Assembly (NCBI GenBank): GCA_002269645.1
Contig: NIVC01000127.1
Coordinates: 62,001 to 126,000, forward strand
Reading direction: 5' to 3'
Length of the DNA stretch: 64,000 nucleotides
DNA from: Macrostomum lignano
Taxonomy: Eukaryota
In this document: in pieces, positions 4,688-64,000 of the stretch
Layout: each line of letters starts with the position of its first letter
How positions within the stretch are numbered: position 1 is the first letter of the stretch
Notes under the pieces: model-generated
What the model saw: the letters and a program-made list of their open reading frames with translations, nothing else
Told to the model about the DNA's origin: nothing
Databases searched by the model: none
Position numbers and translations under genes: made by a program

Positions 4688-6005
4688 TACCGGTATATAT
4701 TATATTAAGACGTAGAGGGGAGGCCCATTGCGCGATCGCAGAACAGGCGGGAGGGGCAGGCAGCAGCAGCCTGAGCGGTCAGCTCAAGCGCCTGCAACTC
4801 AGCGATGAAGCAGTCCGCCAGAGTGGCAGTGCGGGCCTGGCCGCGGCGCAATCGCTCGGTCGGCCGGTGCAGCATGGCCAGTGCCAGAGGGACGGGCGCA
4901 CCGCGACCCAGGGTCCGTAGGCAGTGGCCCAGCAGCATCTGGCGGCGCCGGCGCAGGGTAGCGCCTTCAAGATTCAAGATTCACCTCCAAGATTGTCTCC
5001 ATCCCGAAGAAAGGCGCCTCCACCAGCTTGGTTAACCAGCGGGGCATCGCGCTGGAATGCACAACGCCGAAGCTGCTGAACGCGATTCTGCGCAACCGCC
5101 TCCTGCTCGGCCTCAACCCGCTGCTGCTGAGCCTCCAAAGCGGCTTCCGCCGGGCAGGTTCACCACCGAGCAGGTTGCCACCATCCGCTCTGTCATCAAG
5201 GCCTGCAAGACCCGCCAGCGCTCCGTGTCAATCATCTTCGTCGACTTTCGCAAGGCGTTTGACTCGGTGTCCAGGCCTGCGATCGCGTGGCTTCTCTCTC
5301 ATTATGGCGTACCTGCTGCGCTGGGCTTTTGTCATGTCGAGCGACGGCCCCACAGAAGAGTTCGGCACCAGCTCAGGCGTCCTTCAGGGCGACACGCTGG
5401 CTCCTCTGCTCTTCCTCGTGGGTGTGGACTACGTGCTTCATCGATCCCTCCGCGAGGATGACAGCTACTTGCTGGTCCCACGCCGAAGCTCCAGACACCC
5501 TGCTGTTTCGCTTCCCGCTCTCACGTATGCTGACGACATCGCGCTGCCCAGCGCGCTCTCACAAAGCTCTGCGACGAGGGCGCCCGTGTTGGGCTGCTGG
5601 TGAACGCTCGCAAGACGGAGGCGCTGCACGTGGGCACGAATACCGCCCCAACTCTCAGGCTGGCCCAATGGAGACCGCATCGCGGTGTGCGAGGACTTCA
5701 GGTACCACAGCGCCCTGGTGATGAACCCCAATGCGATTGTCTCTGACAGGAGGAACCAGGCCTGGCACGCACCTCCTCAGGAAAGTTTTTAATTCAGCTG
5801 CCAGAGACGGCCTGAAGGTGCGCCTGTTCCGCGCGGCCGTCGGGCTGATTCTCCTGTACGGCATGGAGGCTGTGCCGCTGACCGAGACGAGAGAGCGAGC
5901 CCTGGACGCGCTCTACCGATCGCTGCTGCGCTACGCGCTGAGTGTGCACTACCCGGAGCGCCTGCCGTCCAACGCTCTGATGGCCCGCGCTGGAACTCCG
6001 CTCGG
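4688..6005. mobile_element. Decayed, 5'-truncated non-LTR retrotransposon (LINE) RT fragment with an internal inversion
   Basis: + strand 4981-6005, frameshifted RT motifs: SKIVSIPKKG..NQRGIAL, QSGFR, IFVDFRKAFDSV, QGDTLAPLLF, YADD, then LRYAL..ARAGTPL. - strand 4977-4705 carries the typical post-RT C-terminus (ATLRRRRQMLLGHCLR...RRGQARTAT) followed by a TA-rich tail. Clade not resolved. Confidence 0.9.
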
Positions 6006-6634: not shown

Positions 6635-9600
6635 CTACACCGAGCTGATGATTTGCGTCACTCGCAACGCCACCCCTTCCTGTGCTACGACGCCTCCCGC
6701 CCGCGGTCTGGCAGCCAGGCCGACTGTTGCTATGGCAACCGGCTGCCTAGCCGGCTCGGATCGGCAGCGAGCGGCGTCCAGCAGAGCCCGCTTGTAATTA
6801 TCGTTCATGAACAGGTAGAAAAACGGATTTAAGAATGCGTTCATGTAGCACATTATCCAGGACATGATGTACACGGAGTCTGTCTTTCGGATTGCGGTGC
6901 GCTGCATCATTATCATGTTATCCAGGATGTGCCAGGGCAAATTGGCTAGCAGGAAGGACACCAGGACGCAGGTTACCATGCGGAAGGATTTGCTCAGCCG
7001 GCCGCTGGTAGCTGATGAAGCTGGGCGAGCGAACCGGTCGGAAAGCTGAGGCTTCTGCGAGGTGGCGCTCTGAAATTGGGGAGAATTTAGGAGATTCATA
7101 AGCAGTGATGAGGCTGTTTTGATGTCGGAGGAGTGAACAGATCGAGCAGTGATGAGGCTTTAATGATCTCGGAGGAGTGAACAGATTGAGCATTGATGAG
7201 GCTGCAATGATCTCGGAGGAGTGAACAGATTGAGCAGTGATGAGGCTGCAATGATCTCGGAGGAGTGAACAGATTGAGCAGTGATGAGGCTGCAATGATC
7301 TCGGAGGAGTGAACAGATTGAGCAGTGATGAGGCTGCAATGATCTCGGAGGAGTGAGCAGAAGTTACACAGAGCCTTGAGTACATTCAATCGAATGATTT
7401 ATTCAAATCGAGCATAATTTTATCTGGCATTATGGCTGACTTGGCCGGTCTCAGTTCCCACTGCGGACTACAAATATGATTATGCATATTTTCATTTCCG
7501 CATTGCAGGGGTGGCCAGCATCTCTATTCTATGAGCCCTAGCTCATTATCTGCCGGACAGATTTGATTAGGGCTCCGGGCAATAAAGTCTTGATAGTTCT
7601 TTTAGTAGCAGAAGAAGAAGAAGCCAGCAACAGCAGCGGAAGAAGAACCAGTAGTAGACGTTAGAGCCGTCCCAGGCTTAATGAGCTCGGCAGTAATTAG
7701 CCCTGAGATCCGAGGCTGGCTTAGGGCTGCTCGGCTAAACTGTGCTCAGGAAAGGTGGGGTGGACACCGCATAGTGACTGATTTAAACTGATTGAAGCTG
7801 CTAGCAAAGCCACGCATCGAACAGTTTGCTGAAGCTGATAACCCGCTAGCTTAATCCGGCATTGCGAAAGGATTATTGGAAGGACCGGCAGATTATCTCC
7901 CCTTCCCCCTTTGGTCGCTGTCTCTCTATCTCCATCAATATCCTTGTGCCCGAGCAAATTGAAGGCTTTGGATGTAGAATGGAGAAGCTCAAAAAACATA
8001 CAGAAGGGAGGCTTCTCTCTTCCTTGCCCAGCCTCGAGGGAATTCCGCTTCATCCCAACACTCCGCCTCCCTTTTCTCCTTTTCTCTCTGACTTTGAGGT
8101 AGCAGCCAATCTAGCTGAGTTGCCTTTCATTCATTCCGCTTTCCGTTGTCGAAATTCCTACTTTTCTAGTTCAAATCATTCGGTCTCTCCGGAACTGTGG
8201 AGTCCCAATTTAAAAAAGTCACTTTTGCTTTTTACTCGGCCTCATCACACGAGTGATCGTTCAGACGGAGAGTTGCTTTACGCTATCTGGTTTGCTTTGA
8301 CTCTTAGGGTTTGTCTGACCGTCGCCGGTGTTGGATCCCGGAAGAAATGATTCAGGGACGGACTTATTCCTAAGCTTGTGGGTTAGCTTTTCCGAGTTTC
8401 AAACAATCAAGAGTTCCCGCAGAAGACTTTCTATAGATGACTACTGCTATGGTCCTCATCTACTGGTTTCCAGCTTGAGATTTCAATCTAGCGGGTCTCT
8501 ATTTGTGGTCCCAGCTACGGTCCCAACTACGGTCCCAGCTACGGTCCCAGCTACGGTCCCAGCTACGGTTCCAGCTACGGTCCCAGCTACGGTCCCAGCT
8601 ACGGTCCCAGCTACGGTCCCAGCTACGGTCCCAGCTACGGTCCCAGCTACAGTCCCAGCTACGGTCCCAGCTGAAGTCCCAGCTACGGTCTCAGCTGCAG
8701 TCCCAGCTGAAGTCCCAGCTGAAGTCCCAGCTGCAGTCCCAGCTACGGTCCCAGCTACAATCCCAGCTACGGTCTCAGCTACGGTCTCAGCTACGGTCCC
8801 AGCTACAGTCCCAGCTACGGTCTCAGCTACGGTCCCAGCTACAGTCCCAGCTACAGTCCCAGCTACGGTCCCAGCTACGGTCCCAGCTGAAGTCCCAGCT
8901 TTAGTCCCAGCTGCAGTCCCAGCTGAAGTCCCAGCTGAAGTCCCAGCTACAGTCCCAGCTACAATCCCAGCTACGGTCCCAGCTACGGTCTCAGCTAAGG
9001 TCTCAGCTACGGTCCCAGCTACGGTCCCAGCTACGGTCCCAGCTCAAAACAGCCGCAACTCTCACAATCGACGGCTGCAACACTCGAGGAGGATTTCGCC
9101 CTCCGCTGCCGCCCTGGCTGGCCCTGAGCAGCGTGTCGGAGCGCCCGACAGCCCTGGTGGTCCTGGCGCTACGCAAGATCCGCATGACCACGGCCGAGTA
9201 GAAGAACACCAGCAGAATGATGGGGATGTACAGGGCCAGCGTGCGCTGCACCAGAGCCGCGGTGGGATTTCTATAGATGGGATGCGAGCACCGGATCGGC
9301 TGGCTGCCGTTGGTGCTACTCCGGAACCCGGTGGCGATCACCCAGACGGGGAAAGTGGCGACATTCCTGGCCGCGGTCAGCAGCCACAAGGCGACGCAGA
9401 GTCGCACCTGGTTGGCCCGGTGCATCCAGCGCTTATGCGCGAACACGCAGTTAGTTGCCAGGAAACGGTCGAAGGCCACGGCGGTGACGCTGGCGACGCT
9501 GACGTTGGTGCTGGTGTAGTCGCAGGTGATCCACAGGTCGCAGAGCCACAGTGGCAGCGGCCAGGTGTCAAACAGGGTGTCGGCCAGGTAGCCGGGCAGG

Positions 9601-9827
9601 GCCGTGGCGCCGATCATGATGTCCGAAGTGACCATCAGGCCGACTATCAGGGCGTGTCCGGGCACCCGGCGGGGCTCCGGGCGGCGAAGGAAGACGGCCA
9701 GCACGGCGGAGTTGACCAAAGTGATGAAGCCGCTAAGCAGCAGGCCGAGGGTGCCGTAGAGCAGCCGCTGGCTGTCCGAGTACTGCCGCTTGAGTTCAGT
9801 TGGCGGAGTGAAATTCCAAGCGGGCAT
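6635..9827 (-). CDS. Rhodopsin-family (class A) GPCR, muscarinic/histamine/aminergic-like, 2 coding exons, about 398 aa
   Basis: Exon 1 is 9827-9066 (TM1-5: NSAV, TSDIMIG, WPLPLWLCDLWITCDYTSTNVS, FDRF), donor ATT|GTGAGA, phase 0. Exon 2 is 7069-6635 (ttcag|SATSQ...; TM6 FLLANLPW, TM7 CYMNAFLNPFFY), ending in TAG. Phases match. Confidence 0.9.
7095..7360. repeat. 44-bp minisatellite, about 6 copies (gagtgaacagattgagcagtgatgaggctgcaatgatctcggag), in the GPCR intron
   Basis: Period of 44 measured (7219 to 7263). Confidence 0.93.
8508..9045. repeat. 12-bp minisatellite (gtcccagctacg)n in the GPCR intron
   Basis: Direct periodicity. Source of the VPAT/SQLR ORFs. Confidence 0.96.
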
Positions 9828-10138
9828 TTTCTGATCAACTGTCGGAGCGGCTGCAGCAGATGATGATGAGGATGAGCACTATGTGGATACAGCCTTGCGT
9901 AGCTTTCGGCTGAGCAGTTCATTAAGCTGTGAATTCAACGGGACTGCAAGATGGACAAGACAGCCAATAGCCGCTCAGCAAGGGGACTCAGTGAAAGTCT
10001 CAGGAGGAGCTCAGGAGGCGGAGCCTGTCAGAGAGCATTATAGTGCGCTGCGAAGAATTGAAAAGTTGTTGGCCGAGTGCTCGAATCTCATTTGGTGTGA
10101 ATAATTTAACTGGCTAGAAATCGATTCCTTAATCCGTG

Positions 10139-11010
10139 TTGGCTAGATTAGCAATCCACTCTATTCCTTTATCCATGTAGGCTAGATTAGCAATCCATTC
10201 TATTCCTTTATCCATGTAGGCTAGATTAGCAATCCACTCTATTCCTTTATTCGCGTAGGCTAGATTAGCAATCCATTCTATTCCTTTATTCACGTAGGCT
10301 AGATTAGCAATCCATTCTATTCCTTTATCCAATGTAGGCTAGATTAGCAATCCATTCTATTCCTTTATCCATGTAGGCTAGATTAGCAATCCATTCTATT
10401 CCTTTATCCATGTAGGCTAGATTAGCAATCCATTCTATTCCTTTATCCAATGTAGGCTAGATTAGCAATCCATTCTATTCCTTTATCCAATGTAGGCTAG
10501 ATTAGCAATCCATTCTATTCCATTATCCATGTAGGCTAGATTAGCAATCCATTCTATTCCTTTATCCATGTAGGCTAGATTAGCAATCCATTCTATTCCT
10601 TTATTCATGTAGGCTAGATTAGCAATCCACTCTATTCCTTTATCCAATGTAGGCTAGATTAGCAATCCATTCTATTCCTTTATTCACGTAGGCTAGATTA
10701 GCAATCCATTCTATTCCTTTATCCAATGTAGGCTAGATTAGCAATCCATTCTATTCCTTTATCCAATGTAGGCTAGATTAGCAATCCATTCTATTCCTTT
10801 ATTCATGTAGGCTAGATTAGCAATCCACTCTATTCCTTTATCCAATGTAGGCTAGATTAGCAATCCATTCTATTCCTTTATTCACGTAGGCTAGATTAGC
10901 AATCCATTCTATTCCTTTATCCAATGTAGGCTAGATTAGCAATCCATTTTATTCCTTTATTCATGTAGGCTAGATTAGCAATCCATTCTATTCCTTAACT
11001 ATCCAGGTAG
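10139..11010. repeat. 39/40-bp minisatellite (gctagattagcaatccattctattcctttatccatgtag)n
   Basis: Direct periodicity, about 22 copies. Confidence 0.96.
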
Positions 11011-11301
11011 GCTAGATCAGCAATTCATTTTACTGGCTAAATTTCGCCATTACTTAGCCAGCTAGAAGTGGTTTCCTAGAAATTCTCGCCCTCCAACTGT
11101 TGCTAAAAATAGCATCTCTCCCACGCGGCGTTGCTGGCAGCCAGGAGCGGCCCAACGATGCCGAAGCCCATGGGAGTGGCCCGCCAGTCGGCTGAGAACT
11201 TTTCTCACCGAGGGCGCTGCAGCGATCAGAGACCGCCGGAGGCAATAAAAAGTCTCTCGGCTACTAGGGGCGGGTCCCAGCAGAAGACAAGCTGTCTCAA
11301 C

Positions 11302-12000
11302 ATGGCGGCCGCCCGCAGTCAGCAGCAGCAGCAGGATCTGGCTGTCCAGGCTGGCCTAGTCAGCTCCCTAACCAGCCTGTTCTCGCAGAAGCTCAACTCA
11401 ACCGAGGAGCTCAAAAAGGTGCCAGTAGTGAAGCCTGTGCCAATTAGATTGAGGCCCCAGCCGCCGCCGGCCTCGCACCTGGGCTACACTCAGGTTGGCA
11501 AGCCAGCTCTGATTCAGCTGGTGCATAATTCTTCACCGGAGTATAACCAGCAGCACCAGCAGCACCAGCAGCACCAGCAGCACCAGCAGCACCAGCAGCA
11601 CCAGCAGCACCAGCAGCAGGCAGCTTACGTCACTAAAAAGACGAAGTACTCGTCTAGAAGCGACTTGAACGGAGGTGGGTCAGGCCAGGCTGGGACGGAC
11701 AAGTACCACCTGGAAGAGTGGACGGTCTACGAGACTCTTCCAGCCGACCTGGCAGCCACTTCAACTTCGTCCAAGTCGGCAGCCGAAGCCGAAGCTGAGC
11801 GTCGACGTTTGAAGGCGGAGTTTGAGGAGAAGCGCCGGCTTCAACGCGTCCAGCGGGAGCGGCAAAGGCCGGCGGCTCCGGCTGCGACGCCCGAGATGTT
11901 CACCAGAGAGGAGTGGACAGTCTACGAGACGGTGCCGAGCCAGCGAGTCCAGGTAACTCGGTCAGCTAGTTCCGGCGCTCACCGGACTGCTCAATTGAGT

Positions 12001-12031
<31 letters not shown>

Positions 12032-12534
12032 TGTACCGCTCGGAGAGCAGCGACTCTGTCCTTGGCTACCGGCGCTACTTGAATGACAGCCAACATGACA
12101 GCAGCAAGGCCGCTCGCCAATCGACATCAACAAAGACTACTACTGCTACCACTAGTACTACCAAGACTGCCCACAATGGCGCCGCAGTGAACAATAGTAC
12201 AAGACGCCCCGCCGCTTCCACTCCGGAAATCTTTACGGCGGAAGAGTGGACTGTGTATGAGACCATACCAGCCGTGACTTCCGGTCAGCAACACCAGCAT
12301 CAGCAGTATCGGCAGCAGGAGCAGCAGAAGCAGCACCAGCAGCAGCAGCAGCAAAAGCAGACTAAACGAAGCGTTCGTTGGACTTCGGACGAGGCGAAAT
12401 CCACCGCTAGACGCAACACGCCCGACATTTATTCGAAAGAGGAGTGGACCGTGTACGAGACGGTTCCCATAGTGACAGAGTCTGGAAACCATCAGCAGCA
12501 ACGGCAGAGTCAGAGACAGCTGGTGCACCAGCAA

Positions 12535-12568
<34 letters not shown>

Positions 12569-13008
12569 GGCTGTACAGAAGTCCCAGCCAAGAGTCCGTG
12601 ATTGGCTACAAGCGTTACCTTGACGACCGTCAGCAAAAGTCCAAAGCGGTGGAGTACAGCAGCAGCAGCAGCAGCAAGCGGCAAACCTATCAGTACGACA
12701 ACGGCCAGTCGCGCCAGCAGCCACGGGTGTCCACCAGAAGCGCCGAAAACCGAGTTGGCACCCCGGTGCGTACAGAGGAGTGGACCGTTGTGCGCCGCGT
12801 GCCGGCCGACTCGGCTGAGCTGCTGCTCAGCGGGCAAGTCGACAGGGCCAGCTGGCGAACTGCTGAGGCCGCCCGGCAACGGCAGACAGCGGCGAGTCCG
12901 GCTGGGTATCGGCGGTACCTGCTGGCCGAGTCCAGCAACAGCCTGGCGTCCGCAGGGGACTTTGAGCACCGCGCTGTGCCTGGTGAGCACCAGTGGGGAT
13001 GGCGGTGA
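11302..13008 (+). CDS. Unrecognised Gln-rich modular protein with 5 EEWTV(Y/V) motifs and 3 GY(R/K)RYL motifs (about 568 aa)
   Basis: Open 1.7-kb non-tandem, GC-rich ORF starting at caacATGG (MAAARSQ). The peptide motifs recur with synonymous codon variation. It may instead splice at G|GTGAGC (about 12981) rather than use the TGA at 13008. Confidence 0.8.
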
Positions 13009-13039
13009 ATCTTGGAGGGGTTTGTGGTAGAGCTTCGGG

Positions 13040-15195
13040 TAGAGATTGGAGTAGAGACTGGAGTAGAGATTGGAGTAGAGATTTGAGTAGAGATTGGAGT
13101 AGAGACTGGAGTAAAGACTGGAGTAGAGATTGGAGTAGAGACTGGAGTAGAGATTGGAGTAGATATTGGAGTAGAGACTGGAGTAGAGCTTGGGGTAGAG
13201 ACTGGAGTAGAGACTGGAGTAGAGACTGGAGTAGAGACTGGAGTAGAGACTGGAGTAGAGACTGGAGTAGAGACTGGAGTAGAGACTGTAGTAGAGACTG
13301 GAGTAGAGCTTGGGGTAGAGACTGGAGTAGAGACTGGAGTAGAGACTGGAGTAGAGACTGGAGTAGAGATTTGAGTAGAGATTGGAGTAGAGACTGGAGT
13401 ATAGACTGGAGTAGAGACTGGAGTAGAGACTGGAGTAGAGATTTGAGTAGAGATTGGAGTAGAGACTGGAGTATAGACTGGAGTAGAGACTGGAGTAGAG
13501 ACTGGAGTAGAAACTGGAGTAGAGATTGGAGTAGAGACTGGAGTAGAGATTGGAGTAGAGCTTGGGGTAGAGACTGGAGTAGAGACTGGAGTAGAGACTG
13601 GAGTAGAGACTGGAGTAGAGACTGGAGTAGAGACTGGAGTAGAGACTGGAGTAAAGACTGTAGTAGAGACTGTAGTAGAGCTTGGGGTAGAGACTGGAGT
13701 AGAGACTGGAGTAGAGACTGGAGTAGAGCTTGGGGTAGAGACTGGAGTAGAGACTGGAGTAGAGACTGGAGTAGAGACTGGAGTAGAGACTGGAGTAGAG
13801 ACTGTAGTAGAGACTGTAGTAGAGCTTGGGGTAGAGACTGGAGTAAAGACTGGAGTAGAGACTGGAGTAGAGACTGGAGTAGAGACTGGAGTAGAGACTG
13901 TAGTAAAGACTGTAGTAGAGCTTGGGGTAGAGACTGGAGTAGAGACTGGAGTAGAGACTGGAGTAGAGCTTGGGGTAGAGACTGGAGTAGAGACTGGAGT
14001 AGAGACTGGAGTAGAGACTGGAGTAGAGACTGGAGTAGAGACTGTAGTAGAGACTGGAGTAGAGCTTGGGGTAGAGACTGGAGTAGAGACTGGAGTAGAG
14101 ACTGGAGTAGAGACTGGAGTAGAGACTGGAGTAGAGATTTGAGTAGAGACTGGAGTAGAGACTGGAGTAGAGATTTGAGTAGAGATTGGAGTAGAGACTG
14201 GAGTAGAGATTTGTGTAGAGACTGGAGTAGAGACTGGAGTATAGATTGGGGTAGAGACTGGAGTAGAGACTGTAGTAGAGATTGGAGTAGAGACTGGAGT
14301 AGAGATTGGGGTAGAGACTGGAGTAGAGACTGGAGTAGAGACTGGAGTAGAGCTTGGGGTAGAGACTGGAGTAGAGACTGGAGTAGAGACTGGAGTAGAG
14401 ACTGGAGTAGAGACTGGAGTAGAGACTGTAGTAGAGACTGTAGTAGAGCTTGGGGTAGAGACTGGAGTAGAGACTGGAGTAGAGACTGGAGTAGAGACTG
14501 TAGTAGAGACTGGAGTAGAGACTGTAGTAGAGACTGTAGTAGAGCTTGGGGTAGAGACTGGAGTAGAGACTGGAGTAGAGACTGGAGTAGAGACTGGAGT
14601 AGAGACTGGAGTAAAGACTGTAGTAGAGACTGTAGTAGAGCTTGGGTAGAGACTGGAGTAGAGACTGGAGTAGAGACTGGAGTAGAGACTGGAGTAGAGA
14701 CTGGAGTAGAGACTGTAGTAGAGACTGTAGTAGAGCTTGGGGTAGAGACTGGAGTAGAGACTGTAGTAGAGACTGGAGTAGAGACTGGAGTAGAGACTGG
14801 AGTAGAGACTGGAGTAGAGACTGGAGTAGAGCTTGGGGTAGAGACTGGAGTTGAGACTGGAGTAGAGACTGGAGTAGAGACTGGAGTAGAGACTGGAGTA
14901 GAGACTGTAGTAGAGACTGGAGTAGAGCTTGGGGTAGAGACTGGAGTAGAGACTGGAGTAGAGACTGGAGTAGAGACTGGAGTAGAGATTTGAGTAGAGA
15001 TTGGAGTAGAGACTGGAGTAGAGACTGGAGTAGAGACTGGAGTAGAGACTGGAGTAGAAACTGGAGTAGAGATTGGAGTAGAGACTGGAGTAGAGATTGG
15101 AGTAGAGACTGGAGTAGAGACTGGAGTAGAGACTGGAGTAGAGACTGGAGTAGAGACTGGAGTAGAGACTGGAGTAGAGACTGGAGTAGAGACTG
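13040..15195. repeat. 12-bp minisatellite (agagactggagt)n, about 180 copies, with recurring cttgggg and tgta variants
   Basis: Direct periodicity. Source of the RDWS/VETG/STPV ORFs. Confidence 0.98.
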
Positions 15196-15484
15196 AACGG
15201 AACCACCAAAGGTCTCTCTGGTCGACCCTTCATCGGATCGCTGGATGCAAAGCCTCTCATTGAATTCGCGTTTAAAAGTCTATAAACTCAAATAGAAGCC
15301 GAAAGATCGAATTTAAAAGTTTGTTTTAACTTATAAAATTTGCAGACTGGAGGCGGGCCGGGTCTGATCGAAGCGGTCTGACAGAGAGCGAAAACCCCTT
15401 CCACACCGGCTACCATATCGCTCGGGACAACCCGATTTACAGCGGGATTTAAACTGAGGCAAGGGGCGGTTGACTGGCTGCTTG

Positions 15485-17214: not shown

Positions 17215-28730
<11,516 letters not shown>

Positions 28731-36416: not shown

Positions 36417-39400
36417 TCAAGCCACAGGCGAGGGCAGCTGCGGCGGCACCCGGGGCATGCAGAACCAGGTGGCCAGGCCGGCCAGCACCAAGTCCTCCTG
36501 TACGCAGCGCCAGTGCGGGGCGCCAGGCTCCCGGCTGTACAGGTACACGCATGGCTGCCAGGTGTGATTGTAGTACACTACCTGGCATTTCAGCCGGCGG
36601 CCCGCCAGAAAGCGGCTCTGGATGATGGCGCTAAGCGACTCCAGCTGGGCGTCGGCGCTCTGGTCGGGGCGGAGCAGCGGCGTCACGTAGGCCAGGTGAC
36701 CTTCGACAGCTTGGAATGGCAGGTGCATCATCTCCGTGCTGGAAGGTTGCCAGGGTGAATGGGTTTTGGGAATTGACCGCTTATTGGGATTATTGAAGAA
36801 TTGGGGTTTGAAGGGCTATGTCTAGGGATATTGATGTCTAGAGACTTAGGGGTATTGATATCTAGACTTGGGGATATTGATATCTAGAGACTTGAGGACA
36901 CTGATATCTAGAGACTTGGGGATATTGATATCTATAGACTTGGGGATATTGATATCTAGAGACTTGAGGACACTGATATCTAGAGACTTGGGGATATTGA
37001 TATCTAGAGACTTGGGGATATTGATATCTAGAGACTTGGGGATATTTATATCTAGACTTGGGGATATTTATATCTAGACTTGGGGATTTTGATATCTAGA
37101 GACTTGAGGACACTGATATCTAGAGACGCGAGGACACTGATATCTAGAGACTTGGGGATATTGATATCTATAGACTTGGGGATATTGATATCTAGAGACG
37201 CGAGGACACTGATATCTAGAGACTTGGGGATATTGATATCTAGAGACTTGGGGATATTGATATCTAGAGACTTGGGGATATTGATATCTAGAGACTTGGG
37301 GATATTGATATCTATAGACTTGGGGATATTGATATCTAGAGACGCGAGGACACTGATATCTAGAGACTTGGGGATATTGATATCTAGAGACTTGGGGATA
37401 TTGATATCTAGAGACTTGGGGATATTGATATCTAGAGACTTGGGGATATTGATATCTAGAGACTTGGGGACATTGATATCTAGAGCCAAATCGAACAGCT
37501 CACCGAATCTGCCTGAGCTTTCCCACCGGCATCTGCTCGTAGCCGCCCCAGTCTAAGAACTTCATCAGCACCGAGTCGCTCTCCGGGAACACGTCGGCAA
37601 TGATTGCCCGATGCCAGATGTTCTCGCCGTCGTCGCCAACAGCGGCGCTGGGCGCAACGCAAACTGCGCCGGGATTCACCGGCCGTGGCAGCGGCGGCAC
37701 GGCGGCCGACTGCTGGCCGGAGGAGGCGTAGTGACGCCGGACAGCGCCGTCCATCTTGGCCAGCTGCTGGTAGGTTGGGTGGCCGGGCTGCTGCAGGAAC
37801 AGGGTGGTACCAAAGCAGGCGGCCGACACCACAACATCGACGTGGACAGCGTCCGGGAGGGTTAGCTGGCGAAAAATTGAGTGTAGGAAACAGTAAGATC
37901 GATTTTTATTACCTTGAAGTACTCGTACTCGAGATTTAGAACCTAGAGCTTCCCCCCCCGTAGTTGAGCAGTAAAGCATGGCTATGTATAATTATATATG
38001 GAAGGCACTGCGGACCAGAGGGGGTCACCTGCCCCCCGGCATCAAGATTATTGCCCGACTGCAATGTGGGAGCCATACAGGAGGTCAATGGGGTCACTTG
38101 CCCCCCCCCCTGATATTTGAGATTATTGCCTGGCTGCAATGGGGGAGGCGTACAGGAGGTCAAGGGGGTCACCTGCCCTCTGGCACCTAACCATAGAAAT
38201 GAGCAATTTTTTATTACTAGATAAGCGCAGTGGCTTATTTCAACGGGTCAGACGAGGTTTTCAGGCTGTTGTAACTTTGTAGGAAAGTAAAAACACAAAA
38301 GCGAAATCATTAAGCGTGATTCAGCTTCCTGCCACTGGCAGAACAGTAATTCTAAACTGGAGAGAGAGAGAGAGCAGAGCAAAAGCCCCGTCCACTGACC
38401 CGGCCGTGCGAAAAGTTTAAAAAGCCGATTTCCGGTCATAATCCAGGCCTTAGCCAGCGCATACGCTACCTCTAGTGCGGTAAGGAGGCCGGAGGGGTGA
38501 GTAAGGATAGGAATCGAATTTCAGAGCTTCGTTATGAAATCTATAAACAGCCCTCTATCAAACAATAATTTAGCAGTTTAATTGCTAAGGTGTTACCTGC
38601 CAACCAAAACCCCAATCCAGCCTTAGAGACCCAAAAAGTGTGGACAAGCGGGAGCAGGCAGACAGGTGCCCGGGCGGGCCCAGTCATCAACGAGACTCTT
38701 CTTTGGGGGGGGGGGCACCATGGGAACACGCGGGGCTAGAGACAGGCCGACAACAAAGGGGCCACACCGCCCAGGGCTTTGAGTTCGGTTTGCCCCTAGG
38801 GGGGGGATATCTTGATATCTATGGTATAGGCAGGAGTCGCGCAACTCAAACCATGGGAAAGAGATAAAAGATAAGGCTGTATTATATATATTCATACTCA
38901 TATGAACTGTACATACAGACACAAGAGATTCCGAGTTCAGTAGGCAGAGATTTCGCAAAAAGAATACAAACAAACTGGAACCCCTAGCCCCGCCGCCCAG
39001 CCAGCGTTGACAGGAAGCTAATATAAATGATCTAACCCTGACTAACTAATAAGCAAAATCTCGGTCAACGAAGGCTTTGTCTAGGTGCAAGCAAAAACAG
39101 GCCAGAGCGCGCGCGGAGAGAACACTTCAGAAATCACCTTAATCAACCATGGCGTTCCAAGACCCGGTCTTAGGACTCCATGAAATCTTCTCTGTAATTC
39201 ATAGTTGAGTTGAAGCATCAGGAATTGTACATAATTACTGCTTAAATTTATCAGCTAGCGACTCTGTAACTGTAACTGAACTACTATCAAACCGGGTCGA
39301 TATCATACTACCGAAATTTCGGTCTCTATGAAGGCCGCAAATCAAACCACAGGGCGATGGTCACAGCTACAAATTCATTTTAAGAGAACGAAGAACAGAA

Positions 39401-42281
39401 CAAGAAGCCGAAACCTCGCATTGTAAAACTATTCAGCAGTTACTAACTTTAACTTATACTATTCTGCCCGAATTTTTTTTACAGCAAAAAGACAAGCCGG
39501 TAAAATTCTTTCTTTCTTTTGCTATCTGGGGGCCTTGAAGAGGCAGAAAAATAGACCCCCCCCTGCTGTTCGTGACGAAGCGCGACAGGCCTGCACTTGC
39601 CCCCTCTGCCTATCTTATCTAACCCTCTCCGAACTTTGAAGCTTAAGCGGCATTTCTGTGTCAGTTTTTGAATCGTTCTACAGGCAAAAAAGCCAACAGA
39701 ACAGGCGCGTGTGCGTGCGTAATGGCGCGACTGTGCACACAGTGAGTGCGTCAGTGCGTGCAACCCGGCATTAATGCTAGAAGCCTAACAAAAGATTTGT
39801 GGAGCAGGAGCAGAGACTTGAGGCTCCTGAGCAAACAGACTAGATAACAGACCAACAGTGGAACAGTTTCTCTGTTGCCCGAGAATTTATGAGCTCAACT
39901 TCACCTGTCCTCGCTATCAGTAAGCCATATCTTGAAACCTTTGCACAGAGTCAAAGTCTAAAATTACCGTCCGATATTTCGCTTATCTCAGATATTGAAT
40001 CACCGCTTTAGCTTCTTTTTATCATTCATAAACAAAAATCTTTATCAAACTACTCTTCGACTTGGTTCCGTTGAATGCGGGGCACCCACCCTGTCTCATA
40101 TCTAAGGTAGGGGGGTTGGCAGTGATAATAAATCAAATGCGCCGCTTCAATAAGCAGCCAGAGGGGGCCACTGTTCAGTTTATGACAAGCTGCACATAGA
40201 AGGTCAAAGCCCGCATTAACTTAGGCGGGGGGACCAGTTAATTACATTCCGACACCTGGACTGGGTCTCTGTTTTAACTAGTTCGTTTGGAACTTAAAAT
40301 AAATAACAGAGCGTCAGGGTAGGAGGCAGTGCGCTTTAAACAAGCCGCCCCCCCCCTGCCACCTCCTACACTTTTGATCGGGCTGACTGGCGCCACAGTT
40401 CTCTAGGCACCAGGATTGCCTGCCTGCCTGCCTGCACCCTGCCGCGCATGAACGGGCGGCACAGAACTTTTCCGTCATGGGAAAATACAGCTAGATAAAC
40501 ATCTATAATAGCATGGAAAACTCTGACAGCGCTTTGGGTGTGCTACTTTGGCAGGATTGTATTGGGTCTCAGGGCGGAATTTACTACTTTTTCCTTAGAA
40601 TTGCGGATAACCTATTCAACTATTTGGCTTTGTGCAAGTCGGCCCACTCTGAGGGCCTGGGAGGGCGGGCCAGTCTGAGGATCTGGGAAAATAGCGGTGG
40701 TCTGAGGACTTGCGTGGCTCAGCAACTGAGGATCTTGGAGTGGGAGGCTGACCCAGCAACTGAGGATCTGGGTAGGTGACCCAGCAACTGAGGATCTGGG
40801 TAGGTGACCCAGCAACTGAGGATCTGGGTAGGTGACCCAGCAACTGAGGATCTGGGAGGGTGGCTCAGCAACTGAGGATCTGGGAGGGTGGCTCAGCAAC
40901 TGAGGATCTGGGTAGGTGACCCAGCAACTGAGGATCTGGGTAGGTGACCCAGCAACTGAGGATCTGGGTAGGTGACCCAGCAACTGAGGATCTGGGTAGG
41001 TGACCCAGCAACTGAGGATCTGGGTAGGTGACCCAGCAACTGAGGATCTGGGTAGGTGACCCAGCAACTGAGGATCTGGGTAGGTGACCCAGCAACTGAG
41101 GATCTGGGTAGGTGACCCAGCAACTGAGGATCTGGGTAGGTGACCCAGCAACTGAGGATCTGGGTAGGTGACCCAGCAACTGAGGATCTGGGAGGGTGGC
41201 TCAGCAACTGAGGATCTGGGAGGGTGGCTCAGCAACTGAGGATCTATGAGGGTGGCTCAGCAACTGAGGATCTGGGAGGGTGGCTCAGCAACTGAGGATC
41301 TGGGAGGGTGACCCAGCAACTGAGGATCTGAGAGGGTGGTTCAGCAACTGAGGATCTATGAGGGTGGCTCAGCAACTGAGGATCTGGGAGGATGGCACTG
41401 TCTAAACTAAACAAGCTATAAACGCGCAGCATCTGAGAATGGATAGGGTTACATATTGATGATGGAAAAATCATAATTCTTAAGGAAATCTACAGCTATC
41501 ATCTTTTTCTAAAAAGCAACAAACCAAACTATAAACTAACCTGGCACATGGTGGGCTGCAGGGCTGGATTGCGGTGAATTGGCACGGCAGTGTTGATTGG
41601 CTTCACGTCGAGCTCGGGGAATCGCTTCTTAATCACCTGCAGAGCGCACTTGACGCATTCCACTGGTCCTGCGAATGGGTTTGGTGGTAATAAATTTAAT
41701 AAACTGCTTGAAAATTATTAGAAACGAACACACGAAACATAATTAACACTCAAGCACAACAGACCCTTACCTCGAACATTAACAACTTGAGTTTTCTTAT
41801 CGAAGAAATTGCGGCTGATCCACACAGAGGCGCCGGACTTGGCCCGGATGTAGTTAATATTACGGCCTCGGGTGCCAACCATGGAGCCGCCCAGCCTGTT
41901 GGGGATGAGGAACTGGTGCACTACATCATTCTCATCCCCCGGAACTGGGGAGACACCGCGGACTGGCAGAGACGAGTCGCACTTGTCAGTTGACTTTTTA
42001 GCTTCACCGCTGACAGCAGTGGCGGCGGCAGCTGTGGCACAGGGACTACGAGGGTCAGTGTCCACACTGGAAGGCCTGCCGCTGTCATCAGCATCTGACT
42101 CCGACTTGGCCTGATTGCCAATTGATTTATTACTGTCCCCACTGCTGCGTCGACAGTCAATGCGCAGCTTATTGCTGTTATTAGCCTTTCCATCAGAGCT
42201 ATAGTTCTTGTTCTCCAATGATTGGTCATTGTTGTTCTCACTCTGCTGAACTGCTGTGCTTAATGACTGCTGCTCAGACAT
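36417..42281 (-). CDS. AKAP1: AKAP1/spoonbill-like KH + Tudor domain RNA-binding protein
   Basis: Exons about 42281-41771 (KH: HQFLIPNRLGGSMVGTRGRNINYIR..), 41668-41541 (GPVECVKCALQVIKKRF..), 37865-37504 (LTLPDAVHVDV..QQPGHPTYQQL..WHRA..FLDWGG..KLRQIR) and 36738-36417 (TEMMHLPFQAVE..). Phases are consistent and motif order matches AKAP1. The N-terminal exon(s) were not located. Confidence 0.88.
36815..37485. repeat. 24-bp minisatellite (gatatctagagacttggggatatt)n in the last AKAP1-like intron
   Basis: Direct periodicity. Confidence 0.96.
38030..38185. repeat. About 67-bp imperfect repeat, about 2.3 copies (ggggtcacctgccccc..attattgcc..ctgcaatg..caggaggtcaa)
   Basis: Direct comparison of the units. 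Confidence 0.7.
40715..41395. repeat. 28-bp minisatellite (cagcaactgaggatctgggtaggtgacc)n in an AKAP1-like intron
   Basis: Direct periodicity, about 24 copies, two variant blocks. Confidence 0.96.
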
Positions 42282-47894: not shown

Positions 47895-48955
47895 TCTGCC
47901 AAGCAGTTTGACTGCCCCAATTTGACTGCCCAATTTGACTGCCCCAATTTGACTACCCCAATTTGACTGCCCCAATTTGACTGCCAAGCAGTTTGAATGC
48001 CCAATTTGACTGCCCAATTTGACTACCCCAATTTGACTGCCCCAATTTGACTGCCCCAATTTGACTGCCAAGCAATTTAACTGCCAAGCAGTTTGAATGC
48101 CCAATTTGACTGCCCAATTTGACTACCCCAATTTGACTGCCCCAATTTGACTGCCCAATTTGACTGCCCAATTTGACTGCCCCAATTTGACTACCCCAAT
48201 TTGACTGCCCCAATTTGACTGCCCCAATTTGACTACCCCAATTTGACTGCCCCAATTTGACTGCCAAGCAATTTAACTGCCAAGCAGTTTGAATGCCCAA
48301 TTTGACTGCCCAAATTGACTACCCCAATTTGACTGCCCAATTTGACTGCCCAATTTGACTGCCCCAATTTGACTACCCCAATTTGACTGCCCCAATTTGA
48401 CTGCCCCAATTTGACTACCCCAATTTGACTGCCCCAATTTGACTGCCAAGCAATTTAACTGCCAAGCAGTTTGAATGCCCAATTTGACTGCCCAATTTGA
48501 CTACCCCAATTTGACTGCCCAATTTGACTGCCCCAATTTGACTACCCCAATTTGACTGCCCAATTTGACTGCCCCAATTTGACTACCCCAATTTGACTGC
48601 CCCAATTTGACTGCCAAGCAATTTAACTGCCAAGCAGTTTGAATGCCCAATTTGACTGCCCAATTTGACTACCCCAATTTGACTGCCCCAATTTGACTGC
48701 CCCAATTTGACTGCCCCAATTTGACTGCCCCAATTTGACTGCCCCAATTTGACTGCCCCAATTTGACTGCCCCAATTTGACTGTCCCAATTTGACTACCC
48801 CAATTTGACTGCCCCAATTTGACTGCCCCAATTTGACTGCCCCAGTTTGACTGCCCCAATTTGACTGCCCCAATTTGACTGCCCCAATTTGACTGCCAAG
48901 CAGTTTGAATGCCCAATTTGACTGTCAAGCAGTTTGACTGCCCCAATTTGACTGC
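47895..48955. repeat. 13/14-bp minisatellite (aatttgactgcccc)n, copy 1
   Basis: Direct periodicity with a recurring aagcaatttaactgccaagcagtttgaatgccc higher-order marker. Confidence 0.96.
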
Positions 48956-49189
48956 AAACAATAACCCTAAGCTTAACGCTAACCTAAACCCTAACCATCA
49001 CCTATAACCCTATCCTTAACACTATCCTTAATCCTGACCAAAACCCTACCATAAACCCACTGACGCAATGAATCATGCATATGTCAGCTCCACTCGAAAT
49101 ATTCGATAAAGATAAAGTAAATGTATAGCCACGATAAACTACTAGAAATTGTGTAAATTAAACTTTTTTGATTAAACGATTAATTTATA

Positions 49190-49440
49190 ATTCAACAGAA
49201 AAGTGCAGATAAGAGGTTACACGTACACATGTACATATCGAAGCGCAATTTCTAATTCAACAGAAAAGTGCAGATAAGAGGTTACACGTACACATGTACA
49301 TATCGAAGCGCAATTTCTAATTCAACAGAAAAGTGCAGATAAGAGGTTACACGCACACATGTACATATCGAAGCGCAATTTCTAATTCAACAGAAAAGTG
49401 CAGATAAGAGGTTACACGCACACATGTACATATCGAAGCG
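49190..49440. repeat. 65-bp repeat, about 4 copies (duplicated at about 50975-51225)
   Basis: ttcaacagaa recurs at 49191, 49256 and onward. Confidence 0.93.
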
Positions 49441-49718
49441 CGCACACGAGCGTATTTACCTGAAAAGTAGAATTATTCATTTAGCAGCCCTAGTCATTAA
49501 AAAATTAGCCATAAACATTAGAACTGCATCAGTCTGGGTCTCGGAACCGACTTTATAAGCTGTATAAGCTACCAAAAAAACAAGTGCAATACATGTAACT
49601 TAAAAGATGCTTTCTAACGGATTAAGTAATAAGAATTTCTAAACAAATTACTAAGATTAAGAAACAAAATAAGCTTTCTGCAGCGCAGCACAGCTTTTTC
49701 TTCTCTACGAGCATTTAA

Positions 49719-63968: not shown

Positions 63969-64000
63969 TCTGGTGAAGTATCAGTTTCAGTATTCTTAGT

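What the first reader, a model, noticed from the sequence alone, without database searches (positions are those of the whole stretch)
11302..13008. Unrecognised modular protein built from EEWTVYET and GY(R/K)RYL motifs
Motif W appears five times: YHLEEWTVYETLP, EMFTREEWTVYETVP, EIFTAEEWTVYETIP, DIYSKEEWTVYETVP and VRTEEWTVVRRVP. Motif Y appears three times: polyQ-LYRSESSDSVLGYRRYL, polyQ-RLYRSPSQESVIGYKRYL and SPAGYRRYL. The order is W-W-Y-W-W-Y-W-Y, separated by Gln/Ser/Thr-rich disordered linkers. Motif codons vary synonymously (gag/gaa, gtc/gtg, tac/tat) while the linkers diverge freely, which suggests protein-level selection on short linear motifs. This looks like a multivalent scaffold: a filament-binding, beta-strand-adding or phospho-Tyr-regulated ruler or condensate protein. 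I recognise no Pfam family for it.
Basis: partly seen in the sequence, partly recalled or inferred. Interest (0 to 1): 0.7.

Follow-up and report, generated by a model that had tools for sequence, protein, structure and literature searches.

The report
Flatworm-only disordered protein with repeated motifs
This is a real, spliced gene for a mostly disordered protein, so far found only in Macrostomum flatworms, in which selection preserves only a few short repeated motifs; it probably acts as a multi-site docking scaffold, possibly anchored to actin, but its partners are unknown.

Summary
ORF 11302-13008 (+) holds five EEWTV modules and three GY(R/K)RYL modules in the order stated. Chance expects 1.6e-4 copies of EEWTV. 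The module codons differ synonymously, and the flanking DNA is at random-level identity.

The ORF end is an intron read-through. By comparison with the only homologues, the CDS is 11302-12982 plus 15346-15452 (595 aa). The phase-1 intron is conserved and carries a 2.1-kb satellite.

The only homologues found in two word-indexed searches (5.8 billion clusters) and one profile search without a word index (1.84 billion representatives) are three near-identical Macrostomum lignano hypothetical proteins. They have the same kinds of module, but one W module sits elsewhere and the linkers are unrelated: ER-rich helices instead of polyQ. Pfam and PDB sequences gave nothing. AlphaFold2 predicts mostly disorder.

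A new lead is the conserved N-terminal VSSL(T/A)SLF. It scores like the published F-actin-binding motif VxxLxxxFE (Lifeact/ITPKA type).

The M. lignano gene is transcribed at a low level. One unpublished in situ record says testes; positional RNA-seq says tail or non-specific.

Best reading: a lineage-restricted multivalent short-motif scaffold. A fixed-spacing "ruler" is disfavoured. Interest is moderate.

The parts
11302..12982 (+). Coding exon 1 (aa 1-560 plus the first base of codon 561). ATG at 11302 in a CAACATGG context. An in-frame upstream ATG at 11158 is not excluded.
   Evidence: ORF. N-terminus aligns with the start of the M. lignano proteins. Donor G|GTGAGC is identical to the M. 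lignano donor.
12983..15345 (+). Phase-1 intron (GTGAGC...TTTGCAG) holding a 12-bp satellite (GTAGAGACTGGA, about 180 copies, 13039-15195).
   Evidence: The M. lignano homologue has a phase-1 intron at the same place, also holding a satellite (45 bp x 13.5 copies).
15346..15452 (+). Coding exon 2 (aa 561-595, stop TAA). Contains the conserved C-terminal block ESENPFHTGYHIARDNPIYSG (15384-15446) with NPx[YF].
   Evidence: Local alignment to M. lignano exon 2 scores 57, against 21.2 +/- 4.3 in 2000 shuffles. tblastn hit at 15384-15446.
11350..11442 (+). N-terminal conserved block (aa 17-47). VSSLTSLFS (aa 20-28, nt 11359-11385) resembles the F-actin-binding motif VxxLxxxFE. LKKV follows at aa 37-40 (WH2-like).
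   Evidence: 61% identical to M. lignano. PSSM from 61 published SFM 9-mers gives 13.8 bits (M. lignano 12.2). It is the top 9-mer in both proteins, and 19/2000 shuffles reach it.
11476..11526 (+). Conserved block N2, LGYTQVGKPALIQLV (aa 59-75).
   Evidence: 53% identity to M. lignano inside a region that otherwise does not align.
11623..11661 (+). Conserved basic block N3, YVTKKTKYSSRSD (aa 108-120, core net charge +4).
   Evidence: 62% identity. AlphaFold2 pairs it as a beta-hairpin with W1 in both species at low confidence, pLDDT 50-63.
11698..11742 (+). W1 module, DKYHLEEWTVYETLP.
11779..11862 (+). Charged helical linker (aa 160-187, AEAEAERRRLKAEFEEKRRLQRVQRERQ). It is the remnant or equivalent of the long ER-rich helix of M. 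lignano.
   Evidence: AlphaFold2 helix with pLDDT 70-85. In M. lignano the helix is 111 aa with pLDDT mostly above 90.
11887..11937 (+). W2 module, TPEMFTREEWTVYETVP.
   Evidence: 68% identity to M. lignano W2.
12031..12084 (+). Y1 module, LYRSESSDSVLGYRRYLN, directly after a pure (CAG)10 run.
   Evidence: 63% identity to M. lignano Y1.
12220..12270 (+). W3 module, TPEIFTAEEWTVYETIP. It has no positional counterpart in M. lignano.
12418..12468 (+). W4 module, TPDIYSKEEWTVYETVP.
   Evidence: 68% identity to M. lignano W3.
12571..12624 (+). Y2 module, RLYRSPSQESVIGYKRYL, after a polyQ run.
12760..12804 (+). W5 module, TPVRTEEWTVVRRVP. The Tyr and the acidic tail are lost, as in M. lignano's last W module (EEWTVTRQIP).
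12895..12924 (+). Y3 module, SPAGYRRYLL.

Best explanation
This is a two-exon gene (11302-12982 and 15346-15452) for a 595-aa protein. The protein is basic (pI 9.8), cysteine-free and almost wholly disordered. So far the family is known only from Macrostomum flatworms.

Only short modules are kept by selection:
- an N-terminal helix-type motif VSSLxSLF followed by LK[KR]V;
- two small blocks, LG[YF]TxxGKPA and VTKKTxYxSR;
- five acidic Trp modules, TP[DE][IM][FY]xxEEWTVYETxP;
- three basic-aromatic modules, SxxS[VI]xGY[RK]RYL;
- a C-terminal NPx[YF] block.

The linkers are low-complexity sequence made by tandem-repeat slippage (polyQ here, ER-rich single helices in M. lignano). They serve only as spacers of free length.

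Proposed mechanism (inferred, not shown): a multivalent short-motif scaffold. The N-terminal motif anchors the protein weakly to actin filaments in the Lifeact/ITPKA manner. Each W and Y module is an independent docking site with the invariant Trp as anchor, so that five plus three sites give avidity or cross-linking. The likely setting is reproductive tissue.

Shown: the gene structure, the module conservation, the restricted distribution and the predicted disorder. Inferred: actin binding, docking, and the tissue in this species.
For: Gene and selection:
- A 568-codon ORF with exact modules. EEWTV is expected 1.6e-4 times by chance.
- Synonymous codon variation in the cores, with random-level flanks.
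- Identity to M. lignano is 53-68% in the modules and 20-24% outside.
- The intron phase and donor are conserved, and exon 2 is significantly similar.

Restricted family:
- Only M. lignano hits in two word-indexed searches.
- Only M. lignano plus one marginal bacterial hit in a HMMER profile search of 1.84e9 representatives that used no word index.
- No Pfam family for the whole protein and nothing significant among PDB sequences.

Disorder and spacers:
- Mean pLDDT is 42 here and 52 in M. lignano. The confident elements are helices in the linker regions (160-187 here; 216-326 and 376-452 in M. lignano).
- The linkers are DNA tandem repeats. Their length differs between species and between M. 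lignano copies.

Valency kept while positions move: both species have 5 W and 3 Y modules, but one W sits at a different place.

Actin lead:
- VSSLTSLFS and VSSLASLFA match P1, P4 and P8 of VxxLxxxFE. PMC13364712 reports P1 and P8 as essential and P4 and P9 as affinity modulators.
- They score 13.8 and 12.2 bits on a PSSM of 61 listed motifs, above about two thirds of those motifs in leave-one-out.

Transcription of the homologue:
- Transcript RNA815_51051 exists, and its probe primers map inside the M. lignano gene.
- The in situ annotation is 'testes' (PMC7336406, Tables S6 and S11).
Against: - No binding partner is known, and nothing here tests binding.
- AlphaFold2 does not predict a helix at the N-terminal motif (pLDDT <50).
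- P9 is Ser or Ala, not Glu. A 9-mer match reached by 1% of shuffled proteins is only a lead.
- Much of the published SFM list is itself unvalidated prediction.
- Expression data conflict. Positional RNA-seq gave 0/1/2/29 reads (tail-region class) in PMC4490696. The 2020 re-analysis gave 'Non-Specific'. The 'testes' in situ result is unpublished and has no reference.
- There is no transcript evidence for the window's own species.
- There is no synteny with the M. lignano loci, so orthology as opposed to paralogy is not proven.
Confidence: 0.5

Rival explanations
1. Self-assembling material. The acidic W strands (EEWTVYE, net -3 to -4) pair with the basic strands of the same or neighbouring molecules (VTKKTKY, GYRRYL). 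These beta-type contacts would build a gel, condensate or fibrous matrix, for example a dense structural body in reproductive cells.
For: - AlphaFold2 pairs the VTKKT block with W1 as a hairpin in both the window protein and M. lignano P0001.
- The charges are complementary: W modules -3 to -4, the VTKKT block +4, Y cores +2.
- Both species have four basic blocks for five W modules, and each Y module directly follows a W module.
- The composition is Q-rich, with Tyr/Trp/Arg 'stickers'.
Against: - The hairpin has pLDDT of only 50-63, and both models share one three-sequence alignment.
- No W-Y pairing was predicted for any other unit.
- The last W module is not acidic (+1 here, 0 in M. lignano).
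- The M. lignano linkers are highly charged ER helices, which favour solubility.
Confidence: 0.2
2. Phospho-tyrosine switch scaffold. E-E-W-T-V-Y-E-T-[VIL]-P is a Src-type substrate site (acidic upstream, Val at -1, Glu at +1, hydrophobic at +3). Once phosphorylated it becomes a pYExPhi / TxYxx[VI] docking site for SH2 domains, as in p130Cas or ITSM-bearing tails.
For: Four of the five W modules carry TVYET[VIL]P exactly. The kinase and SH2 preferences are from general knowledge and were not tested here.
Against: - The invariant part across all ten modules of both species is E[EQ]WTV, not the Tyr.
- The last module lacks Tyr in both species (VVRRVP and VTRQIP), and another M. lignano module lacks ETxP.
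- There is no membrane anchor, SH3 domain or other signalling domain.
Confidence: 0.12
3. Molecular ruler. The modules bind successive subunits of a periodic filament (actin, microtubule) at a fixed spacing set by helical linkers, as nebulin or Xin repeats do.
For: - Spacing in the window protein is fairly even, at 65, 52, 59, 66, 55, 57 and 43 aa.
- The linkers are predicted helical.
- The W module ends ...W..YETxP, loosely like the ...WLFETxP of Xin repeats (from memory; Xin 9-mers are listed).
Against: - M. lignano spacing is 131, 34, 96, 46, 51, 48 and 21 aa, and one W module is in a different position.
- M. lignano copies differ by 19- and 36-aa linker indels.
- W-module 9-mers score no more than 1.2 bits on the SFM/Xin PSSM.
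- There is no Pfam Xin hit.
Confidence: 0.06
4. Not a functional gene: a chance or decaying ORF in repeat-rich DNA, with the motifs being recent DNA-level duplications.
For: - 42% of the window is tandem repeat.
- The linkers are themselves microsatellites.
- The source species has no transcript evidence here.
- One M. lignano copy carries a frame change.
Against: - The ORF is 568 codons long.
- The motif flanks are at random identity while the cores differ only synonymously.
- A diverged homologue conserves the same blocks, the intron phase and exon 2.
- The homologue is transcribed.
Confidence: 0.03

Closest known systems
Macrostomum lignano hypothetical proteins BOX15_Mlig023050g2 / g1 and BOX15_Mlig033590g1 (P0001, P0003, P0002)
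   Same: - Same N-terminal blocks, five W and three Y modules, and the C-terminal NPx[YF] block.
- Same phase-1 intron, with a satellite inside it.
- No cysteine, pI about 9.8, mostly disordered.
   Different: - Only 35-37% identical overall.
- The linkers are ER-rich single helices instead of polyQ.
- One W module sits at a different position.
- No shared neighbours: the RhoGEF-WD40 gene downstream in all three M. lignano loci is absent from the window.
- These proteins are themselves uncharacterised.
[quoted passage not shown]
   Same: - The N-terminal VSSL[TA]SLF has Val at P1, Leu at P4 and Phe at P8.
- It lies in a disordered region and is conserved between the two species.
- Its PSSM score is within the range of listed motifs.
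   Different: - P9 is Ser or Ala instead of Glu. Listed predicted motifs include S, A, R and Q there, and USP54 with Gln still binds.
- No helix is predicted.
- Binding is untested.
- This concerns only the N-terminus, not the W and Y modules that the finding is about.
Xin repeats (XIRP1/2), 16-aa actin-binding motifs separated by variable spacers
   Same: A short conserved motif with a central Trp and an ...aromatic-E-T-x-P ending, repeated many times with variable spacers.
   Different: - The register differs: W-L-F-E-T in Xin against W-T-V-Y-E-T here.
- The residues are beta-branched and strand-prone rather than helical.
- There is no Pfam Xin hit, and the PSSM score is no more than 1.2 bits.
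- Xin is described from chordates (PMC2478706 title and abstract).
Multivalent short-motif scaffolds in disordered proteins (p130Cas YxxP array, GW182/TNRC6 Trp motifs with a Q-rich region, Eps15/epsin DPF/NPF arrays)
   Same: Many copies of one short motif in a disordered chain. Motif number is conserved more than motif position, the linkers evolve freely, and Trp or Tyr act as anchor residues. This comparison rests on general knowledge.
   Different: - There is no sequence relationship and no folded domains.
- The Trp is flanked by Glu and Thr, not by Gly/Ser.
- The module is long (about 17 aa) and nearly invariant, more like a mini-domain than a typical 3-6-residue motif.
ER/K single alpha-helix (SAH) spacers
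   Same: The M. lignano linkers (ERERRRREDSERRRLAEAE...) are predicted as isolated helices of 111 aa (pLDDT mostly above 90) and 77 aa (pLDDT mostly 76-87). The window keeps a 28-aa remnant.
   Different: In the window most linkers are polyQ or Ser/Thr-rich, so the helix type is not conserved. SAH behaviour is predicted, not measured.

Membership tests
Mlig023050/Mlig033590 protein family (unnamed, Macrostomum) | Significant sequence similarity over the conserved blocks | tested here: met
   E = 2.9e-22. The profile of W/Y units hits P0001 at 4.1e-70. Blocks are 53-68% identical.
Mlig023050/Mlig033590 protein family (unnamed, Macrostomum) | Same module inventory (N1-N3 blocks, 5 W, 3 Y, C-terminal NPx[YF]) | tested here: met
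   One W module is at a different position.
Mlig023050/Mlig033590 protein family (unnamed, Macrostomum) | Same intron position and phase | tested here: met
   Phase 1 and G|GTGAGC in both. Exon 2 similarity scores 57 against 21 +/- 4.
Mlig023050/Mlig033590 protein family (unnamed, Macrostomum) | Conserved gene neighbourhood (orthology) | tested here: not met
   Nothing coding other than the gene itself is shared between the M. lignano loci tested (L001, and L002 with 10-kb flanks) and the masked window. The RhoGEF-WD40 neighbour is absent.
SFM F-actin-binding motif (VxxLxxxFE) | Val (or I/L) at P1 and Phe (or Y) at P8, reported as essential | tested here: met
   V20 and F27 here, V27 and F34 in M. 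lignano. These columns are invariant in A1.
SFM F-actin-binding motif (VxxLxxxFE) | Leu at P4 and Glu at P9 (affinity modulators) | tested here: inconclusive
   P4 is Leu in both. P9 is Ser (window) or Ala (M. lignano), not Glu. The published list includes S, A, R and Q at P9.
SFM F-actin-binding motif (VxxLxxxFE) | Overall fit to the motif profile | tested here: met
   13.8 and 12.2 bits. It is the top 9-mer in both proteins, P is about 1e-5 per random 9-mer, and 19/2000 shuffled proteins reach it. The PSSM used only half of the published list (genes N-X).
SFM F-actin-binding motif (VxxLxxxFE) | Short helix that binds the actin filament groove | not testable with these tools
   The AlphaFold2 monomer shows no helix there (pLDDT <50). 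No multimer prediction or binding assay was available.
Xin repeat (Pfam PF08043) | Match to the family HMM, or the V-x-x-x-R-W-[LI]-F-E register | tested here: not met
   No Pfam hit at E<=10 for the whole protein or its pieces. W-module 9-mers score no more than 1.2 bits on a PSSM that includes 14 Xin 9-mers.
WH2 domain (Pfam PF02205) | Amphipathic helix followed by LKK[TV] at canonical spacing; HMM match | tested here: not met
   LKKV / LKRV is present 10 residues after the Phe. However, there is no Pfam hit, and the spacing is about two residues longer than the P16-P19 position described in PMC13364712.
ITSM / SH2-docking tyrosine motif (TxYxx[VI]) in receptor tails | TxYxx[VI] pattern in every functional copy, in the cytoplasmic tail of a membrane receptor | tested here: not met
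   The pattern fits W2-W4 (W1 has Leu), but Tyr is absent from the last module in both species. There is no transmembrane segment: the maximum 19-residue Kyte-Doolittle window is 0.98.
GW182/TNRC6-type Trp motifs | Trp flanked by Gly/Ser/Thr in GW/WG repeats; Ago-hook or PABC-binding Pfam domains | tested here: not met
   All five motif Trp residues are flanked by E and T. There are no Pfam hits.

The most novel reading that the evidence does not exclude
EEWTV(Y)ETxP is a previously undescribed Trp-anchored binding module. On this reading the protein is a flatworm-specific cytoskeletal or germ-cell scaffold. Either the module recruits a conserved cellular machine five times per chain, or it zips onto its own basic GYRRYL / VTKKT strands as an acid-base beta 'velcro' that builds a structural body. 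In both cases the protein would be tied to actin by an independently evolved Lifeact-type motif.
Probability: 0.25. Interest if true: 0.6.

Novelty: new variant of a known kind. Interest (0 to 1): 0.4.

Why it matters
If the reading holds, this would be a clean natural example of a protein reduced to short binding modules. Selection holds about 17-residue motifs almost invariant. The spacers have been replaced wholesale by different low-complexity sequence (polyQ against ER helices) and differ freely in length between the two species and between M. lignano copies. The number of motifs is kept while their positions drift.

That makes it a useful test case for how valency, rather than spacing, is selected in disordered scaffolds.

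The N-terminal motif would extend the recently defined actin-filament-binding motif to flatworms as another independent origin.

For Macrostomum biology it is a candidate lineage-specific reproductive gene, in a genus where reproductive genes evolve fast and where RNAi and transgenesis are available.

The general significance is moderate. No long-standing question depends on it.

Tried and rejected
- **Full-length homologue search.** It was swamped by polyQ words, because only the 8000 candidates sharing most words were scored. Repeating it with the polyQ/His runs and most of the low-complexity linker sequence removed gave the same M. lignano hits only.
- **Profile of ten W / W..Y units against 1.84e9 representatives.** The one extra hit, P0004 (E = 9.5e-4), is a bacterial-type membrane protein with EAAW...DTLDGYRxYLxAFPSG repeats. 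It matches only the Y part, so I treat it as a chance resemblance of a short motif.
- **Pfam on the whole protein, six pieces and P0001.** Nothing above noise.
- **PDB sequence searches with the profile and the stripped protein.** Only E > 0.7 noise.
- **Identifying the species from a neighbouring ORF (58213-58854).** No homologue at all.
- **Synteny with M. lignano loci.** The first attempt was swamped by microsatellites. After masking, nothing but the gene itself is shared.
- **Mlig-sperm1 (PMC5816591).** It is a different gene, Mlig020950.
- **Supplement look-ups.** Mlig023050 was not found in PMC5816591, PMC5730564 or PMC10786194.
- **W module as a Xin/SFM variant.** Rejected on register and PSSM score.
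- **W-Y intramolecular pairing.** AlphaFold2 did not predict it. Only the VTKKT-W1 hairpin appeared, at low confidence.
- **Other motif classes considered from memory and set aside because the pattern does not fit:** LIR, LC8 TQT, KLC W-acidic, eIF4E-binding YxxxxL-Phi, and TRAF6.
Full report
**1. What is in the sequence**

The + strand of the window carries an ORF from the ATG at 11302 to a stop at 13006-13008. Its 568-aa product is 16% Gln, Ser/Thr/Arg-rich and free of Cys.
- EEWTV at aa 138, 203, 314, 380 and 492;
- GY[RK]RYL at aa 255, 435 and 535;
- the order W-W-Y-W-W-Y-W-Y.

From composition, 1.6e-4 copies of EEWTV are expected. In 20,000 shuffles no non-trivial 5-mer occurred more than three times.

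The repeats are not recent DNA duplications. In W1-W4 the ten core codons are 92% identical as protein but 79% as DNA, and the first Thr uses all four ACN codons. The 60 nt on either side are 27-28% identical, which is random level. The observation and the synonymous-variation argument are confirmed.

**2. The gene model extends beyond the finding**

The only homologues are three M. lignano proteins (section 3). They are encoded by two exons separated by a phase-1 intron with donor G|GTGAGC.

The window has the same donor at 12982|12983. A good acceptor (TTATAAAATTTGCAG|AC) lies at 15345|15346. Joining them gives a 595-aa protein ending ...HRAVPDWRRAGSDRSGLTESENPFHTGYHIARDNPIYSGI, with the stop at 15450-15452.

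Exon 2 aligns to M. lignano exon 2 (ESENPFHTGYHIARDNPIYSG against DNSNVFHQQFNVSRENPVFRG). The score is 57, against 21.2 +/- 4.3 in 2000 shuffles.

The 2.36-kb intron is mostly a 12-bp satellite of about 180 copies. The M. lignano intron at the same place holds a different satellite, 45 bp x 13.5 copies.

An in-frame ATG at 11158 cannot be excluded as the start. However, the alignment with the M. lignano N-terminus favours 11302.

**3. Relatives**

- The full-length search was swamped by polyQ words but still found three M. lignano hypothetical proteins. These are BOX15_Mlig023050g2, Mlig033590g1 and Mlig023050g1, with E values from 2.9e-22 to 5.3e-10.
- A query with the polyQ/His runs and most low-complexity linker sequence removed found only the same family.
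- A HMMER profile of ten W or W..Y units was run, without a word index, against 1.84 billion cluster representatives. It found P0001 (4.1e-70) and one marginal bacterial repeat protein (9.5e-4). The latter resembles only ...DGYRxYL... and I regard it as chance.
- Pfam gave no family for the whole protein or for P0001, and only two sub-threshold DUF matches for pieces.
- PDB sequence searches gave only noise.

The family is therefore, as far as these databases reach, confined to Macrostomum. The window's own protein is not in the protein collection, so the window probably comes from a species without deposited proteins.

No neighbouring gene is shared with the M. lignano loci. Their RhoGEF-WD40 neighbour is absent from the window. 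Orthology is therefore likely but not proven.

**4. What is conserved and what is not**

The window protein and P0001 align at 37% overall. Identity is concentrated in short blocks, at 53-68%. Outside the blocks it is 20-24%. The blocks are:
- N1: G.VSSL[TA]SLF[SA]Q...S.E.LK[KR]V
- N2: LG[YF]T..GKPA.I..V
- N3: [YF]VTKKT.Y.SR
- the W modules: TP[DE][IM][FY]..EEWTVYET.P
- the Y modules: [DS]S.[DE]S[VI].GY[RK]R[YL]L[DN]
- the C-terminal block: N.FH......R[DE]NP[IV][YF].G

The linkers are unrelated in composition. Here they are polyQ/His-Gln/Ser-Thr. In M. lignano they are ER-rich.

In both species the linkers are DNA-level tandem repeats. The window has pure (CAG)n and (ACCAGCAGC)8. M. lignano has a 57-bp unit x 4.6 copies at 98% identity.

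The M. lignano copies differ from each other by 19- and 36-aa linker indels.

Both species have five W and three Y modules. The order differs, however: W-W-Y-W-W-Y-W-Y here and W-W-Y-W-Y-W-W-Y in M. lignano. Spacing is 43-66 aa here against 21-131 aa there.

The invariant core of all ten W modules is E[EQ]WTV. The last module has lost the Tyr in both species (VVRRVP and VTRQIP).

**5. Structure prediction**

AlphaFold2 with the three-sequence alignment gives mean pLDDT 42 for the window ORF and 52 for P0001.
- The confident elements are helices in the linker regions. In the window this is aa 160-187 (pLDDT 70-85). In M. lignano they are aa 216-326 (pLDDT mostly above 90) and 376-452 (pLDDT mostly 76-87), which look like ER/K single alpha-helices.
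- Both models pair the basic N3 block with the acidic W1 module as a beta-hairpin, but at pLDDT of only 50-63. No W-Y pairing is predicted.
- There is no transmembrane segment or signal peptide: the maximum 19-residue hydropathy is 0.98. The pI is 9.8 in both proteins.

**6. A lead for the N-terminus**

[quoted passage not shown] It is shared by Lifeact, ITPKA/F-tractin, USP54, Xin repeats and others. P1 (Val) and P8 (Phe) are essential. P4 (Leu) and P9 (Glu) tune affinity. USP54 binds with Gln at P9.

The most conserved N-terminal stretch here is VSSLTSLFS, and VSSLASLFA in M. lignano. That gives P1, P4 and P8 exact, with P9 Ser or Ala.

I built a PSSM from 61 distinct motifs in that paper's Supplementary Table 3 (genes N-X only). 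On it:
- the two 9-mers score 13.8 and 12.2 bits;
- each is the best 9-mer in its protein;
- they score above about two thirds of the listed motifs in leave-one-out;
- P is about 1e-5 per random 9-mer;
- 19 of 2000 shuffled proteins reach the score.

LK[KR]V follows ten residues later, which is WH2-like. There is no Pfam WH2 hit, though, and the spacing is off.

This is a testable lead for actin association of the N-terminus. It says nothing about the W and Y modules, whose 9-mers score no more than 1.2 bits. Their register (W-T-V-Y-E-T) also differs from Xin (W-L-F-E-T).

**7. Expression of the homologue**

Brand et al. 2020 (PMC7336406) list Mlig023050.g1 in Tables S6 and S11. The entry records:
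- in situ probe RNA815_51051;
- pattern 'testes';
- no reference (the acknowledgements mention unpublished primers);
- positional class 'Non-Specific';
- no neoblast, germline or social annotation.

I checked that both primers lie inside the gene in two M. lignano loci. The amplicon encodes DEAEMLLS...TEQWTVYET.

In the original positional RNA-seq (Arbore et al. 2015, PMC4490696, Additional file 1) the same transcript has 0, 1, 2 and 29 reads in samples A-D. Its class is 0,0,+, meaning tail region.

So the homologue is transcribed at a low level and is associated with the reproductive or tail region. The tissue is unresolved. For the window's own species I have no transcript data.

**8. Interpretation**

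Shown:
- a real, spliced, lineage-restricted gene;
- a disordered basic protein;
- purifying selection confined to a handful of short modules;
- linkers that turn over by repeat slippage;
- module number conserved, while position and spacing are not.

Inferred: the modules are docking elements, and the protein is a multivalent scaffold. The Trp is the invariant anchor. The N-terminus may tether the protein to actin filaments. The long helical or polyQ linkers give reach rather than a fixed measure.

Rivals:
- *Self-assembly through acidic W and basic VTKKT/GYRRYL strand pairing.* Some support comes from charge complementarity and the low-confidence hairpin.
- *A phospho-Tyr switch scaffold.* This is weakened because Tyr is dispensable in the last module while EEWTV is not.
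- *A fixed-period ruler.* This is disfavoured by the spacing differences.
- *A non-functional ORF.* This is essentially excluded.

**9. Novelty and score**

The M. lignano homologues are deposited as hypothetical proteins, and one appears in a supplementary in situ table. Neither the family nor its motifs have been described. No known family matches.

It is a new family within a known class, namely disordered multivalent motif scaffolds. I do not consider it a new kind of system.

Interest is moderate (0.4). It is a neat case of selection on motifs and valency, with a possible independently evolved actin-binding motif, in an organism where RNAi and transgenesis can test it. No mechanism is established and the wider impact is limited.

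Noticed in passing
window 1-64000: 42% of the window (26,925 of 64,000 bases) is masked by Tandem Repeats Finder. It holds dozens of distinct arrays with units of 4-97 bp, many 1-2 kb long. Genes sit as islands between the satellites.
   Followed up: partly
window 10124-11029 and 22126-24282: A 39-bp satellite ends 270 bp upstream of the gene's ATG. It is a reverse-complement relative of the 42-bp satellite 7 kb downstream of the gene (about 33 of 42 positions match). The gene therefore lies between inverted arrays of one satellite family.
   Followed up: partly
window 12983-15345; L001 5136-5946: The single intron of this gene carries a satellite in both species, with unrelated units: 12 bp x 180 copies here and 45 bp x 13.5 copies in M. 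lignano.
   Followed up: partly
window 47932-49441 and 49718-51226: A tandem segmental duplication, 99.8% identical over 1510 bp. Each copy has a 14-bp satellite, a short telomere-like TAACCC(T) tract and a 65-bp x 4 repeat.
   Followed up: partly
window 9006-9878 (-) and 6638-7159 (-): Two exons of a rhodopsin-family GPCR (Pfam 7tm_1, E = 1.5e-22 and 3.4e-6). They are divergently oriented upstream of the gene. A 12-bp satellite (8507-9044) lies between the exons.
   Followed up: partly
window 37503-37991 (-) and 41721-42305 (-): A Tudor-domain exon and a KH-domain exon lie on the same strand. They may belong to one TDRKH-like (germline piRNA-pathway type) gene.
   Followed up: no
window 4962-5600 (+): A reverse-transcriptase fragment (Pfam RVT_1, E = 4.8e-6, below the gathering score). 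It is probably a decayed non-LTR retroelement.
   Followed up: no
window 62490-63980 (-): A long ORF with a C2H2 zinc finger and polyQ/Ala-rich low complexity.
   Followed up: no
window 54802-58854 (+): Three long non-repetitive ORFs (54802-55533, 56533-56961, 58213-58854) have no Pfam family. The last one had no homologue at all in the 5.8-billion-cluster search. This may be another lineage-restricted gene.
   Followed up: partly
L002 about 11290-11482 (M. lignano NIVC01000292.1): The copy encoding P0003 (Mlig023050g1) changes reading frame inside the ER-rich repeat. Its annotated C-terminus is therefore an out-of-frame reading of the W3-Y3 region. The cause is either an assembly error in the repeat or a decaying homeologue.
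   Followed up: partly
P0004 (bacterial-type protein, 542 aa): A membrane-anchored protein with seven or more repeats of EAAW..A...DTLDGYR.YL.AFPSG.H..EA. It was the only non-flatworm hit of the W/Y profile (E = 9.5e-4). I judge the shared ...DGYRxYL... to be coincidental, and the repeat itself was not identified.
   Followed up: no
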